Assembly: GCF_006345805.1 (NCBI RefSeq)
Contig: NW_021834053.1
Location: 1 to 27,149 of the forward strand
Source: Octopus sinensis
Lineage: Eukaryota
DNA: 27,149 bases
Direction of reading: 5' to 3'
Each line of letters starts with the position of its first letter. The stretch's first letter is position 1. The position numbers and the translations under genes are program-made. Below, in pieces: positions 4,778 to 17,137 of this stretch. Below the pieces are notes generated by a model, which searched no databases, was not told where the DNA came from, and worked only from the letters and a program-made list of their open reading frames with translations.

Positions 4778-4836
4778 TCATGCTGTGTTCATCCAGGGTG
4801 CCGTTGGACAAACCTTCCAGAGGCATAGACTTCGAT
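4778..4836 (-). CDS. Terminal coding exon 3 ([N][18 protein letters not shown])
   Basis: Long polypyrimidine tract TTTTTTTTGTTTTTTTTCCCC...TTTTTCACAG| (AG at 4838-4837), with a branch-like CTTAAT upstream. Phase-1 reading gives the C-L-W-K-V-C ring and a TGA at 4780-4778. Confidence 0.9.
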
Positions 4837-4906
4837 CTGTGAAAAATGGGTTTTGGGGAAAAAAAACAAAAAAAACATTAAGAAGCATGTAACCGATTAT
4901 AATTAC

Positions 4907-4955
<49 letters not shown>

Positions 4956-5299
4956 AAGGTGGAGAGCTAGCAGAATCGTTAGCACGCCGGACGAAATGCT
5001 TAGCAGTATTTTCGTCTGCCATTATACGTTCTGAGTACGAATTCCGCCGAGGTCGACTTTGCCTTTCATCGTTTCGGTGGGGTCGATAAATTAAGTACCA
5101 GTTGCGTACTGGGGGTCGATCTAATCGACTGGCTCTCTCACCCAAAATTTCGGGCCTTGAGCTTAGAGTAGAAAAGAATATATCAAGGCAACAAGACGGC
5201 GAGCTGGCAGAAACGTACTACTCAAGTACTGGGTTCGATGTGATCGATTGTCCCCGCTCCCTAAAAACATCTAGGCCTTGTGCCTATAGTGAAAAGGAC

Positions 5300-5341
<42 letters not shown>

Positions 5342-5719
5342 CATCATCATCATTACGAAGGCGGTAAGCTAGCAGAATCGTTAGCACGCCGGGCAAAATG
5401 TTTAGCGGCATTTCGTCCGTCTTAACGTGCTGAGTTCAATTTCCGCCAAGGTCAACATGGCGTTTCATTCGTTTAGCATCGATGAAATAAGTACAAATTA
5501 AATAAGTTCTGGGATCGATGTAATTGATTAGCTTCCTCCCTCAAAATTTCAATCTTGTGCCTATAGTAAAAAGAATTGTTGTTGTTGTTGTTATTATTAT
5601 TTTATGTTTGACTTTTGCTTTACATTTGTACAAGTTGGCTCCAAGTCTCGCCCAGAGACCTCAAGAGACAACAAGTTGGAAGTTCATGTTGGTGTTATCC
5701 CTAGGGTGGCATATATTTG

Positions 5720-5752
<33 letters not shown>

Positions 5753-16325: not shown

Positions 16326-16357
<32 letters not shown>

Positions 16358-16411
16358 TAATATATATATGTATATATATATGTATATATATATATATATT
16401 ATATATATATG

Positions 16412-16459
<48 letters not shown>

Positions 16460-16489
16460 ATATATATACATATATATATATTATATACA

Positions 16490-16521
<32 letters not shown>

Positions 16522-17137
16522 CATATATATATAATATATTATATATATATATATATTATATATATATATATATATATCTATATATATATATATGTATATG
16601 TATATATAGATGTGTGCATACACAAAACATATATGTATGTATATATATACACACACATAATCATACATACATGTATACTTACAAAATGTATGTATATGTT
16701 TATATATGTGTGTGTATGTGTAGTGAGAGAGAGAATGGAGAGGGAGGGAGGGAGGAAAAGCTACAAAAAAGCTAATATAAGAAAGAAAGAAAGAACAAAG
16801 GAAGAGACAAGCTCAGTGAGATAGACTGGCGCCGCTGAGTCAAAAATAAGAGGGTGAGAGAAATAGACAACAAGAGAGATAAGGAGAGAGAGAGAGATAG
16901 ATAAGGAGATAGAGAGAGATAAGGAGAGAGAGAGAGAAGGAAAGGGAGAGAGAAAGAGAAAAAGAGAGAGAGAACGAGAGAGAGAGACGTAAGAAAGGTG
17001 TTTGCACTTACTTTGACCAAAAGGTCTTCCGGTTCCGCGAAATCTGTTTGAATGGGTGAAGTCCTCACAAGGGTTGACATACAAAGTATGAGGGCCAAGA
17101 TTGTATTGACAAGGGTTAACGATTTTGGTGACTGCAT
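4778..17137 (-). CDS. Urotensin II-like / somatostatin-related (CLWKVC) neuropeptide precursor, 3 coding exons: join(17137-17012, 7758-7641, 4836-4778), 100 aa
   Basis: Assembled by hand. Exons of 126+118+59 = 303 nt give one open frame from ATG to TGA, with canonical GT..AG introns of 9253 and 2804 bp and compatible phases (0, then 1). The product has an N-terminal hydrophobic signal peptide, dibasic KR/RR/KR sites and a C-terminal [14 protein letters not shown]. This matches the CLWKVCPxAPW motif of Aplysia urotensin II-like peptide (recalled family knowledge, not a database search). Confidence 0.9.
4956..5580 (+). mobile_element. Three tandem SINE family B copies (about 4956-5181, 5193-5300, 5358-5576) in intron 2, antisense to the gene
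   Basis: Repeated GGCAGAA(T/A)CGTTAGCACGCCGG heads and GCCTATAGTAGAAA(A/G)GA(TTA)n tails. The middle copy is internally deleted. Confidence 0.8.
5590..5720 (-). mobile_element. Probable 3' UTR tip of a non-LTR retrotransposon with (AAT)n tail
   Basis: The minus strand ends ...AAAGCAAAAGTCAAACATAAAATAATAATAA and is flanked on both sides by (AAT)n. Family assignment is from recall only. Confidence 0.35.
5752..6041 (-). mobile_element. 5'-truncated R4/Dong-like (RLE) LINE 3' end
   Basis: The minus strand reads [39 protein letters not shown]/..[17 protein letters not shown] (stop 5853-5851). This is homologous to the C-terminus of the 22085-23430 element (TVIVPVIVGVLGMIKK..EIQKIVLTSIA.ILRKTLSI*). 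Flanked by (AAT)n on both sides. Confidence 0.75.
6250..6860 (+). mobile_element. Decayed RTE-like LINE RT C-terminal fragment containing a 3x ~24-bp tandem duplication (6515-6589)
   Basis: Remnant motifs [17 protein letters not shown] (cf. LEEVDNFKYLG), DREVL and [31 protein letters not shown] occurs three times with slight variation. Confidence 0.45.
6985..7125. mobile_element. 141-bp mariner-type MITE
   Basis: TIRs T(A)AGGTTGTCCCAAAAGTTCGTA and TACGAACTTTTGGGACAACCTAA. TA target duplication at 6983-6984 and 7126-7127. Confidence 0.85.
7641..7758 (-). CDS. Coding exon 2 ([39 protein letters not shown] + 1 nt)
   Basis: Acceptor TATTTTGTTGACAG| (AG at 7760-7759) and donor GTA|GTAAGTG (GT at 7640-7639). 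The exon is 118 nt, phase 0 in and phase 1 out, exactly what is needed to join exon 1 to the CLWKVC frame of exon 3. It carries the RR and KR prohormone convertase sites. Confidence 0.88.
7857..8913 (-). mobile_element. Three SINE family B copies (about 7857-8071, 8161-8367, 8699-8913) in intron 1, sense to the gene
   Basis: Each is a reverse complement of the family B consensus seen at 2706 and 4956. (AAT)n spacers and tails separate them. Confidence 0.8.
8962..9317 (+). mobile_element. Mariner transposase catalytic-domain remnant
   Basis: [21 protein letters not shown] / [18 protein letters not shown] / KGYTINAEY / [12 protein letters not shown] / YSPDL, with frameshifts and deletions. Confidence 0.85.
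10484..10870 (-). mobile_element. SINE family A, near full length
   Basis: Reverse complement of the 2139-2550 family. Confidence 0.85.
10991..11207 (-). mobile_element. SINE family B copy
   Basis: Reverse complement of the family B consensus. Confidence 0.8.
11323..11630. repeat. Diverged tandem dimer, about 165-bp period
   Basis: GGCTRAC(T)CCGTGAGTAAATTAA..CATTCCGG..GAAT.CGGACC..CAATCC.GAAAT.TTGGATT occurs at 11323 and 11487. Confidence 0.75.
11933..12165 (-). mobile_element. SINE family A, 3' half
   Basis: Matches the reverse complement of the family A 3' part (GCGGCCATGCTGG, GCCGAACC.CTAAGTTACGGGGACGTAAAC). Confidence 0.75.
12431..13324 (+). mobile_element. Internally deleted mariner (Tc1/mariner) element
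   Basis: N-terminal HTH region [48 protein letters not shown] (12614-12851) is joined directly to the C-terminal [38 protein letters not shown]. The central WVPHEL/first-D region is absent. A left TIR-like TTTTGGGCCATAAATAATGCGTTTT is at about 12433; the right TIR is truncated. Confidence 0.9.
13540..13905. repeat. Higher-order tandem repeat, 3 copies of about 110-130 bp built from TG/TATG microsatellites
   Basis: Anchor AAATGTATAATTACATTACATGTATGTGTGTATATGTAGGTATGTA at 13614, 13724 and 13855. Confidence 0.8.
14045..14450. repeat. Compound (GGT)n/(GGC)n/(GT)n/(GTC)n/(TTG)n simple repeat
   Basis: Direct reading. The poly-Gly/Val/Thr ORFs here are artefacts. Confidence 0.85.
14680..14964 (+). 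mobile_element. SINE family A, 5'-truncated
   Basis: GACCAAGGCCTTGTGAGTGGA.TTGGTAGACGGAAACTGAAAGAAGCC...CAGCATGGCTGCAGTCA, as in 2139-2550. Confidence 0.8.
14979..15006. mobile_element. Orphan right end of the mariner MITE family seen at 6985-7125
   Basis: AGTGTTTACGAACTTTTGGGACAACCTAA + TA is identical to 7097-7127. No left TIR is nearby. Confidence 0.7.
15164..15375 (+). mobile_element. SINE family C variant: partial tRNA head, shared core, distinct tail
   Basis: B-box-like GGTTTCGATTCC. The core at 15197-15262 matches 20900-20964. The tail GCGATGGACTGGCGTCCCGTCCAG differs from that of the 20824 copy. Confidence 0.65.
15383..16021 (+). mobile_element. Mariner transposase remnant (catalytic domain to 3' end)
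   Basis: [91 protein letters not shown]. Stops and deletions are present. The 3' end is followed by TA. Confidence 0.88.
16325..16700. repeat. Long (TA)n / (TACA)n microsatellite
   Basis: Direct reading. Confidence 0.9.
16860..16990. repeat. (GA)n-rich tract, i.e. (TC)n at the start of intron 1
   Basis: Direct reading. Confidence 0.85.
17012..17137 (-). CDS. Coding exon 1 of the precursor: signal peptide plus acidic spacer ([42 protein letters not shown])
   Basis: ATG at 17137 has A at -3 and no upstream in-frame Met. Hydrophobic core [12 protein letters not shown], with a plausible V-x-T/S cleavage after residue 26. Ends at a strong donor, AAA|GTAAGT (GT at 17011-17010), phase 0. The ORF-track ORF 16772..17137 is this exon reading through into a (TC)n intron. 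Confidence 0.9.

What the first reader, a model, noticed from the sequence alone, without database searches (positions are those of the whole stretch)
4778..17137. Hidden three-exon urotensin II-like / somatostatin-related neuropeptide gene
Seen in sequence: three short exons (126, 118 and 59 nt) spread over 12.4 kb of repeats join through canonical splice sites with matching phases into a clean 100-aa prepropeptide. It has a signal peptide, KR43, RR66 and KR71, and a C-terminal [29 protein letters not shown] with a Cys86-Cys91 ring. Established knowledge: a C-x-W-K-x-C ring is the core of vertebrate urotensin II (CFWKYC), and WK is shared with somatostatin. The CLWKVCPxAPW form is known from the Aplysia urotensin II-like peptide and related molluscan somatostatin-related peptides, the family from which cone-snail consomatins are proposed to derive. 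Inference: this is the cephalopod orthologue. The family is known, but the ORF track misses the gene almost entirely, and its cephalopod receptor and function are, to my knowledge, poorly characterised.
Basis: partly seen in the sequence, partly recalled or inferred. Interest (0 to 1): 0.85.

Follow-up and report, generated by a model that had tools for sequence, protein, structure and literature searches.

The report
Octopus somatostatin/urotensin-like neuropeptide gene
The three short exons are real and encode the octopus version of a known molluscan brain peptide (Aplysia "urotensin II", also called SSRP-like); the gene is already in RefSeq as an unnamed protein, so this is a correct but fairly ordinary find.

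Summary

That product is identical to RefSeq XP_029656637.1, "uncharacterized protein LOC115230636 [Octopus sinensis]". So the gene is not hidden from eukaryotic annotation; it is only unnamed.

- **Orthologue:** Argonauta hians has the same three exons and phases, and the frame is under strong purifying selection (pN 0.19, pS 0.73).
- **Family:** searches recover 19 gastropod and chiton precursors, including Aplysia. All carry the invariant [19 protein letters not shown].
- **Gene structure:** I checked Lottia and a chiton directly. The structure matches the published one for molluscan SSRP-like/apUII genes (Koch et al. 2022), a family that paper already reports in Cephalopoda.

It is therefore a new member of a known kind.

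Points of mild interest:
- The octopod peptide is the most divergent of the 21 sequences compared.
- By homology with Aplysia the short form probably starts at Ala79, not Ser84.
- The Argonauta copy has a 24-nt in-frame deletion that removes the second ring cysteine.

Expression, peptide processing and the receptor could not be tested here.

The parts
17012..17137 (-). Coding exon 1 (126 nt, aa 1-42). It carries the start codon (17137-17135), the signal peptide (about aa 1-26, 17137-17060), the first propeptide and Lys42, the first half of the K42R43 dibasic site.
   Evidence: Searches give the sequence. One search shows the ATG is the first start after an upstream stop. One search shows a hydrophobic core at aa 6-24 (9-mer Kyte-Doolittle mean up to 2.88) and a -3/-1 compatible site VRT|SP, which corresponds to VKC|SP in Argonauta. 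The ACATAATGCAG start context is the same in Argonauta.
7759..17011 (-). Intron 1 (9253 nt, phase 0, GTAAGT...AG). It splits the dibasic site K42|R43. It is full of simple repeats, SINE-like copies and a mariner remnant.
   Evidence: Lottia has an intron at the same position and phase (R|K), as does the chiton Liolophura (R|R). The Argonauta intron is 1721 nt.
7641..7758 (-). Coding exon 2 (118 nt, aa 43-81 plus the first base of codon 82). It encodes the conserved propeptide [21 protein letters not shown], the R65R66 and K70R71 sites, and the N-terminal 10 residues of the mature peptide (7671-7641).
   Evidence: Outside repeats, this is the only segment that aligns at DNA level with the Argonauta locus (78% over 149 nt, E 1.7e-26).
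4837..7640 (-). Intron 2 (2804 nt, phase 1, GTAAGT...polyY-AG). It lies inside codon Asn82, four codons before the first ring cysteine.
   Evidence: Argonauta has the same phase. Lottia and the chiton also have a phase 1 intron here, but five codons before the Cys. This matches the published family structure.
4778..4836 (-). Coding exon 3 (59 nt, rest of codon 82 to aa 100, plus TGA at 4780-4778). It encodes (N)[18 protein letters not shown] and includes the Cys86-Cys91 ring at 4825-4808.
   Evidence: The core [12 protein letters not shown] is identical to the MS-verified Aplysia apUII and to the family consensus.

Best explanation
This is the Octopus sinensis gene (RefSeq LOC115230636) for the precursor of the molluscan SSRP-like neuropeptide. 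That peptide was first described as Aplysia urotensin II (apUII).

Shown here:
- There are three coding exons on the minus strand, with intron phases 0 and 1, and they give an intact 100-aa secretory-type precursor.
- The frame is under purifying selection between Octopus and Argonauta.
- The C-terminal peptide carries the family's invariant core [12 protein letters not shown].
- The intron positions match those of a limpet and a chiton.

Inferred from the characterised Aplysia precursor and from general prohormone biochemistry:
- The signal peptide is removed near Thr26/Ser27.
- Prohormone convertases cut at K42R43, R65R66 and K70R71, and carboxypeptidase trims the basic residues.
- This releases a 29-residue C-terminal peptide, G72-A100, with a Cys86-Cys91 disulfide that closes a six-residue ring displaying Leu-Trp-Lys-Val.
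- A further monobasic cut after Arg78, homologous to the Aplysia short form, would give the 22-mer [23 protein letters not shown] cut after the octopod-specific Arg83 would give a 17-mer.
- The peptide has a free C-terminus. There is no Gly for amidation and no C-terminal basic site.
- It is probably secreted by neurons and acts on a class-A GPCR of the somatostatin/urotensin/MCH/opioid-related 'SSTL' group. That receptor type has been deorphanised in the annelid Capitella.
- Its action is probably inhibitory and modulatory. In Aplysia the peptide suppresses feeding motor programmes.
For: - **Exons, splice sites and product:**
- **Independent gene model:** the identical 100-aa protein is XP_029656637.1 on a 27149-nt contig.
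- **Argonauta hians orthologue:** 66% identical, with exons of 129/118/35 nt, GTAAGT donors and the same phases.
- **Selection (Nei-Gojobori, 92 codons):** pN 0.19 against pS 0.73 overall, and pN 0.06 against pS 0.78 in the mature-peptide region.
- **Exhaustive phmmer over 1.84 billion representatives:** the only hits are Argonauta (8.9e-33) and a 110-aa gastropod-type precursor (E 5.8e-5, aligned over aa 8-97). That precursor ends in the Aplysia apUII sequence. It is encoded by an uninterrupted ORF on a transcript-like contig, so the alignment spans both octopus junctions.
- **Profile search:** 19 gastropod and chiton homologues, including Aplysia LOC106013717 and Lottia LOTGIDRAFT_168040. 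The KR site and [19 protein letters not shown] are conserved in them.
- **Independent HMM:** an HMM built only from non-cephalopod members scores the octopus protein at 39.3 bits.
- **Intron positions re-derived here:** Lottia and Liolophura.
- **Function and receptor context from the literature:**
Against: - No transcript, peptide or receptor evidence for octopus could be obtained here. Neither protein collection holds a Logan or JGI transcript-derived copy of the octopus protein.
- The pro-region alone (aa 1-77) resembles non-cephalopod pro-regions only weakly: 6.4 bits, reached by 4 of 1000 shuffles, or by 22 of 1000 when the signal peptide is kept fixed.
- No Pfam family matches the protein.
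- The signal peptide was judged only by hydropathy and the -3/-1 rule. SignalP was not run.
- The candidate molluscan receptor failed to respond to its peptide in the one published test.
- The Argonauta copy lacks the ring. This shows the ring is dispensable, or that the gene is decaying, in at least one octopod lineage. It could also be an assembly error.
Confidence: 0.9

Rival explanations
1. The ring exon is genuine, but in vivo it is spliced to upstream exons other than the two proposed, so the 100-aa product is an annotation artefact.
For: No RNA evidence was available here. The pro-region has only weak similarity to non-cephalopod precursors. The evidence behind the RefSeq model could not be inspected.
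Against: Argonauta has the same three exons in the same order, with the same phases and GTAAGT donors, and all three are conserved at protein level. Intron 1 splits a dibasic site exactly as it does in Lottia and a chiton. The exon count, the phases and the start of the mature peptide at the end of exon 2 all match the published family structure. An independent pipeline reached the same model.
Confidence: 0.03
2. The locus is a non-functional or decaying copy (pseudogene) that merely keeps an open frame.
For: The Argonauta orthologue has lost 8 codons, including the second ring cysteine. The octopod mature peptide has diverged from a sequence that is otherwise invariant across the gastropods and chiton compared here. 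No transcript-derived copy was found.
Against: The frame, start codon, splice sites, dibasic sites and both cysteines are intact in O. sinensis. Synonymous sites are saturated while pN is 0.19 overall and 0.06 in the mature region. That pattern is not expected of a pseudogene.
Confidence: 0.04
3. The gene encodes a secreted salivary or venom peptide that mimics prey somatostatin/urotensin signalling, by analogy with cone-snail consomatins, rather than an endogenous neuropeptide.
For: Consomatins arose from this very gene family, and octopuses are venomous. The octopod peptide is unusually diverged for a signalling member.
Against: The window holds a single ring exon. Selection between Octopus and Argonauta is strongly purifying, including in the mature region, whereas venom paralogues diversify there. 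A 2026 survey of cephalopod venom-gland toxins mentions this gene family only as the origin of cone-snail toxins and lists no cephalopod member.
Confidence: 0.03

Closest known systems
Aplysia californica urotensin II-like peptide precursor (apUII; Romanova et al. 2012, PMC3493602; here P0004, LOC106013717)
   Same: Both are secretory precursors of about 100-113 aa. Both have a dibasic KR site followed by a C-terminal peptide with the identical core [12 protein letters not shown] and a C-x4-C disulfide ring. The Arg that precedes the MS-verified short form aligns with octopus Arg78.
   Different: The octopus peptide differs at about 7 of 20 mature positions. It has one extra residue between that Arg and the ring and an extra Arg83 next to SLC. 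It ends ...WMNTA at the stop codon instead of ...WLISK. The pro-region is about 25-35% identical at best. Processing, expression and activity are known for Aplysia and unknown for octopus.
Cone-snail and other molluscan signalling SSRP-like genes (Koch et al. 2022, PMC9048919)
   Same: [quoted passage not shown] The LWK motif, the four-residue loop interior and the Pro/Trp-rich tail are also shared. I confirmed the structure in Lottia and Liolophura.
   Different: In octopods the split codon of intron 2 lies 4 codons before the first Cys, not 5. The mature sequence is not the invariant [18 protein letters not shown](V/I)S seen elsewhere.
Vertebrate urotensin II / URP
   Same: Both have a six-residue disulfide ring with a central Trp-Lys, placed at the C-terminal end of a small precursor after a basic cleavage site. 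The ring size is identical.
   Different: The ring interior is LWKV, not FWKY. The octopus peptide has a 9-residue tail after the ring. Vertebrate UII/URP genes have additional phase 1 introns. The Pfam Urotensin_II model does not match. Orthology is proposed by Koch et al. but is not settled.
Allatostatin-C (including Octopus vulgaris OvAstC, bioRxiv 10.64898/2026.02.18.706622)
   Same: Both are disulfide-looped protostome neuropeptides whose receptors are related to somatostatin receptors. [quoted passage not shown]
   Different: The AstC loop always has six internal residues and no WK motif. Octopus has a separate AstC gene and two deorphanised AstC receptors. This is a distinct family.
Consomatins (cone-snail venom peptides of the C-superfamily)
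   Same: They derive from the same ancestral gene and keep the same exon/intron plan and the C.WK.C motif.
   Different: Consomatins are venom-gland expressed, multi-copy and hyperdiverse in the mature region. The octopus gene has a single ring exon in the window and is under purifying selection.

Membership tests
Molluscan/protostome SSRP-like (apUII-type) neuropeptide precursors | A Cys loop with four internal residues that contains an aliphatic residue followed by Trp-Lys (I/V/L-W-K) | tested here: met
   The loop is C86-L-W-K-V-C91. The definition is from Koch et al..
Molluscan/protostome SSRP-like (apUII-type) neuropeptide precursors | A mature peptide extended on both sides of the ring: a Gly/Ser-rich N-terminus, and a C-terminal tail with prolines and a single Trp | tested here: met
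   The N-terminal part is [13 protein letters not shown] and the tail is PTAPWMNTA. The alignment to 19 members is.
Molluscan/protostome SSRP-like (apUII-type) neuropeptide precursors | Three coding exons, with a phase 0 then a phase 1 intron; signal peptide on exon 1; mature peptide begins at the 3' end of exon 2; WK and disulfide on exon 3 | tested here: met
   Searches give the structure here, and searches give the published definition. The same structure is found in Argonauta, Lottia and Liolophura. The split codon of intron 2 is shifted by one codon relative to the first Cys.
Molluscan/protostome SSRP-like (apUII-type) neuropeptide precursors | Statistically significant sequence similarity to characterised members | tested here: met
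   phmmer gives E 5.8e-5 against 1.84 billion proteins for an apUII-type precursor. An HMM built from non-cephalopod members only scores 39.3 bits. The signal lies mostly in the mature peptide; the pro-region alone is weak (6.4 bits).
Molluscan/protostome SSRP-like (apUII-type) neuropeptide precursors | An N-terminal signal peptide, and a dibasic processing site directly upstream of the mature peptide | tested here: met
   K70R71 aligns with the KR site conserved in the family, with a one-residue indel. The hydrophobic core at aa 6-24 and a -3/-1 compatible site were judged by heuristics only. SignalP was not available.
Molluscan/protostome SSRP-like (apUII-type) neuropeptide precursors | Expressed in neurons, and processed to a disulfide-bonded peptide | not testable with these tools
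   No octopus RNA-seq or peptidomics data could be reached. No transcript-derived copy is present in the collections.
Molluscan/protostome SSRP-like (apUII-type) neuropeptide precursors | Activates an SSTL-type class-A GPCR | not testable with these tools
   Only the annelid receptor Ct-SSTL1 has been deorphanised. The molluscan candidate did not respond.
Vertebrate urotensin II / URP (Pfam Urotensin_II) | A match to the family's sequence model, and the CFWKYC ring | tested here: not met
   There is no Pfam hit at E<=1 for the octopus protein or at E<=10 for any of the 21 homologues. The ring is CLWKVC. Only C, W, K, C and the ring size are shared.
Allatostatin-C | A Cys loop with six internal residues and no WK motif | tested here: not met
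   The loop here has four internal residues and contains WK. Octopus AstC is a different peptide.
Consomatin-type venom paralogues | Multi-copy genes with a hyperdiverse mature region | tested here: not met
   The window has one ring exon. In the mature region pN is 0.06 against pS 0.78 versus Argonauta. Venom-gland expression, the other defining feature, could not be tested here.

The most novel reading that the evidence does not exclude
In the gastropods and the chiton compared here, the mature peptide [19 protein letters not shown] is invariant. Octopods alone have remodelled it. They show about 7 substitutions, an insertion before the ring, a new Arg83 cleavage site next to the ring, and loss of the C-terminal basic site. 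In Argonauta an in-frame deletion also removes the second ring cysteine.

This would mean that the ligand-receptor pair was re-tuned in octopods, with ring-independent signalling or loss of the system in argonauts. Such a pair would offer a natural experiment on what the urotensin/somatostatin-type ring is needed for.
Probability: 0.25. Interest if true: 0.5.

Novelty: new member of a known kind. Interest (0 to 1): 0.3.

Why it matters
- **Annotation:** it gives a functional name to an unnamed RefSeq gene.
- **Concrete predictions:** it supplies a ligand sequence, predicted processing products and masses for the SSRP-like system in an octopus.
- **Timing:** this comes just as octopus peptide GPCRs are starting to be deorphanised (AstC receptors, 2026 preprint), while no molluscan SSRP-like receptor has yet been confirmed.
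- **Comparative angle:** the octopod divergence and the Argonauta ring deletion bear on structure-function questions.
- **Limits:** it does not change the picture of the family. Koch et al. 2022 already reported the family in all molluscan classes, including Cephalopoda.

Tried and rejected
- **Pfam:** scans of the precursor and of all 21 homologues gave no Somatostatin or Urotensin_II hit.
- **Rfam and ARAGORN:** nothing was found in the window, so the SINE-like repeat stays unclassified.
- **First word-indexed protein search:** it found only the protein itself and Argonauta. The profile search was needed to reach the rest of the family.
- **Other cephalopods:** no O. vulgaris, O. bimaculoides, squid, cuttlefish or Nautilus orthologue appeared in any of the three searches. 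I could not tell whether the divergence is octopod-wide or cephalopod-wide.
- **Koch et al. supplements:** the files that list the cephalopod sequences are not held, so I could not check whether this exact sequence is already listed.
- **Literature searches:** the LOC identifier gave nothing. The CLWKVC string gave only the two known papers and the preprint of one of them. Two broader searches were poorly targeted and uninformative.
- **Loci L004 and L005:** they were not exposed to the Python sandbox. I read the chiton exons by pattern search and direct reading instead. The Aplysia locus holds only exon 1 and was not analysed.
- **DNA-level alignment to Argonauta:** it supports exon 2 only. 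Exon 1 (67.5% over 80 nt, E 1.9) and exon 3 are too short or too diverged, so I used protein-level and codon-level tests instead.
- **3' end:** there is no canonical AATAAA within about 700 nt after the stop. An ATTAAA lies at 4058-4053. I make no claim about the UTR ends.
- **Second mariner-like ORF (12959-13306):** it gave no Pfam hit, so only the HTH_48 piece is claimed.
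Full report
**1. Observation.**

I read the three proposed exons on the minus strand with their flanks and joined them in a script.
- Exon 1 runs 17137-17012 (126 nt) and starts with ATG at 17137-17135. It is followed by GTAAGT.
- Exon 2 runs 7758-7641 (118 nt). It follows ...ttttgttgacAG and is itself followed by GTAAGT.
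- Exon 3 runs 4836-4778 (59 nt). It follows a long polypyrimidine tract plus AG and ends with TGA at 4780-4778.

It has K42R43, R65R66, K70R71, Cys86 and Cys91. The introns are 9253 nt (phase 0) and 2804 nt (phase 1).

The ATG is the first possible start in that frame after an upstream stop. The C-x-W-K-x-C motif occurs once in the six frames of the window.

One claim is overstated: that an ORF track misses the gene almost entirely. Exon 1 sits in a 121-aa ORF that reads through into the intron, and exon 3 sits in a 36-aa ORF.

**2. The gene model already exists.**

A search of the 5.8-billion-protein collection returned an identical 100-aa protein. It is RefSeq XP_029656637.1, "uncharacterized protein LOC115230636 [Octopus sinensis]", and it lies on a contig of 27149 nt, which is this window. 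NCBI's eukaryotic pipeline therefore reached the same three-exon model independently. The gene is unnamed rather than hidden. I could not see what evidence supports that model.

**3. Orthologue in another octopod.**

The second hit is a 93-aa Argonauta hians protein, 66% identical. I fetched its locus and mapped its exons.
- The exons are 129, 118 and 35 nt. Both donors are GTAAGT and the acceptors are polyY-AG.
- The introns are 1721 and 2339 nt, and the phases are again 0 and 1.
- The start-codon context ACATAATGCAG is shared with the octopus.

At DNA level, only exon 2 with its immediate flanks aligns outside repeats (78% over 149 nt).

A Nei-Gojobori count over 92 aligned codons gives pN 0.19 against pS 0.73, so synonymous sites are saturated. 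In the mature-peptide part the values are pN 0.06 against pS 0.78. The reading frame across all three exons is therefore under purifying selection.

**4. Family.**

An exhaustive phmmer scan of 1.84 billion representatives found only two proteins. One is Argonauta. The other is a 110-aa protein (E 5.8e-5, aligned over aa 8-97) that ends ...[21 protein letters not shown]. That is the mature Aplysia apUII sequence verified by tandem MS in Romanova et al. 2012. This protein is an uninterrupted ORF on a 1193-nt transcript-like contig, so the alignment runs across both octopus junctions.

A profile search with the three sequences then recovered further homologues of 75-147 aa, giving 19 non-cephalopod members in all. 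They come from Aplysia (LOC106013717), Lottia, Pomacea, Haliotis, Gigantopelta, Patella, Bradybaena, Babylonia, Nucella, Elysia and the chiton Liolophura.
- In all 19 the stretch [19 protein letters not shown] is invariant.
- In all 19 it is preceded by a KR site 7 residues upstream.

An HMM built from the non-cephalopod sequences alone scores the octopus protein at 39.3 bits. The pro-region alone (aa 1-77) scores only 6.4 bits. That score is reached by 4 of 1000 shuffles, or by 22 of 1000 when the signal peptide is kept fixed. The sequence homology therefore lies essentially in the mature peptide, as is usual for neuropeptide precursors.

**5. Gene architecture.**

Koch et al. 2022 define the molluscan SSRP-like genes, and the consomatin genes derived from them, by these features:
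- three exons separated by a phase 0 and a phase 1 intron, with the first intron longer;
- the signal sequence on exon 1;
- the WK motif and the disulfide loop on exon 3.

They define the peptide by I/V/L-W-K in a loop with four internal residues, a Gly/Ser-rich N-terminus and a Pro/Trp-containing C-terminal tail. The octopus gene meets every point.

I re-derived the structure in Lottia gigantea and in Liolophura sinensis.
- In both, intron 1 is phase 0 and splits the first dibasic site (R|K and R|R). In the octopus it splits K42|R43 in the same way.
- In both, intron 2 is phase 1 within the first Gly codon of GGM, five codons before the first Cys. In the octopods it lies four codons before the Cys. 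This fits small indels around the junction, since octopods have one more residue between the conserved Arg and the ring.

**6. How it most likely works.**

Shown:
- the precursor is intact and conserved;
- it has a hydrophobic N-terminal core at aa 6-24;
- a -3/-1 compatible site, VRT|SP, is matched by VKC|SP in Argonauta.

Inferred from the MS-mapped Aplysia precursor and from standard prohormone processing:
- Cleavage at K42R43, R65R66 and K70R71 releases [36 protein letters not shown] and AQL. The second of these is well conserved in Argonauta.
- It also releases the C-terminal 29-mer G72-A100, ringed by Cys86-Cys91.
- Octopus Arg78 aligns with the invariant Arg that precedes the Aplysia and Conus short form SGGMSLC.... 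The homologous short form is therefore the 22-mer [22 protein letters not shown].
That residue is Met in every non-cephalopod member and is Arg only in the two octopods.
- There is no amidation signal, and the peptide ends at the stop codon.

By analogy, the peptide would be a neuronal inhibitory modulator. In Aplysia, apUII suppresses feeding motor programmes. It would act on a class-A GPCR of the SST/UT/MCH/opioid-related group. The annelid receptor Ct-SSTL1 has been deorphanised with an EC50 of 13 nM, but the candidate molluscan receptor did not respond. None of this is tested for octopus.

**7. Comparison with what is known, and novelty.**

- The family is known: apUII in 2012 and SSRP-like in 2022.
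[quoted passage not shown] The supplementary lists are not held, so I cannot say whether this species is among them.
- No paper in the library mentions LOC115230636. Apart from those two papers and the preprint of one, none prints the CLWKVC string.
- The 2026 preprint on octopus AstC receptors never uses the terms SSRP or urotensin and calls somatostatin receptors deuterostome-specific.
- It is not a vertebrate UII by sequence model, since no Pfam hit was found.
- It is not allatostatin-C, which has a six-residue loop.
- It does not behave like a venom paralogue. The window holds a single ring exon, and selection on the mature region is purifying.

Its interest is modest.

**8. What is mildly unusual.**

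- Among the 21 sequences, the two octopods are the only ones to depart from the invariant mature peptide.
- The Argonauta genome carries an in-frame 24-nt deletion between the two Trp codons. In the octopus sequence this interval is flanked by a CTGGA microhomology. The deletion removes KVCPTAPW, and with it the second ring cysteine.
- This may be a real lineage-specific loss of the ring or an assembly error. I could not decide which.

**9. Other contents of the window.**

- Both introns and both flanks are dominated by simple repeats.
- Intron 1 carries a mariner/Mos1 transposase HTH remnant at 12576-12851 on the plus strand.
- There are five copies of a roughly 92-nt SINE-like element. Related copies in the Argonauta locus are 80-89% identical.
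- No other gene, tRNA or Rfam RNA was found.

Noticed in passing
L001:14308-14342 (Argonauta hians exon 3), compared with window 4836-4778: The Argonauta orthologue has an in-frame 24-nt deletion between the two Trp codons. In the octopus sequence the interval is flanked by a CTGGA microhomology. The deletion removes KVCPTAPW, including the second ring cysteine, so the peptide cannot form the intramolecular ring. The rest of the peptide is conserved.
   Followed up: partly
Alignment A3; window 7671-7641 and 4836-4781: [19 protein letters not shown] is invariant in 19 gastropod and chiton precursors. The two octopods are the only divergent members: about 7 of 20 positions differ, there is a 1-aa insertion, a new Arg lies directly before SLC, and there is no C-terminal basic site or extension.
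   Followed up: partly
window 7756-7758 / 17012-17014; L003:1121-1123 / 10089-10091; L004:1091-1093 / 5868-5870: The phase 0 intron splits the first dibasic cleavage site in octopus (K|R), Lottia (R|K) and a chiton (R|R). This is an unusually precise conserved intron position across molluscan classes.
   Followed up: yes
window 12576-12851 (+), possibly extending to 13306: A remnant of a mariner/Mos1-type transposase (Pfam HTH_48, E 7e-15) lies inside intron 1, antisense to the gene. The next ORF (12959-13306) looks like a transposase C-terminus by eye but gave no Pfam hit.
   Followed up: partly
window 2209-2301, 10716-10807, 14690-14742, 20363-20455, 21769-21852; L001:11097-11189, 18732-18823, 23286-23377: A SINE-like repeat of about 92 nt is present in five copies in the window. 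Copies in the Argonauta locus are 80-89% identical. No tRNA or Rfam match was found, so its origin is unclassified.
   Followed up: partly
window 7629-7496 region and aa 44-64 (7755-7693): The propeptide [21 protein letters not shown], which lies between two dibasic sites, is well conserved in Argonauta (ALYGILNQNSPWDNPNYLAFL). It could be a second bioactive product, like the apUII-related peptides detected in Aplysia.
   Followed up: no
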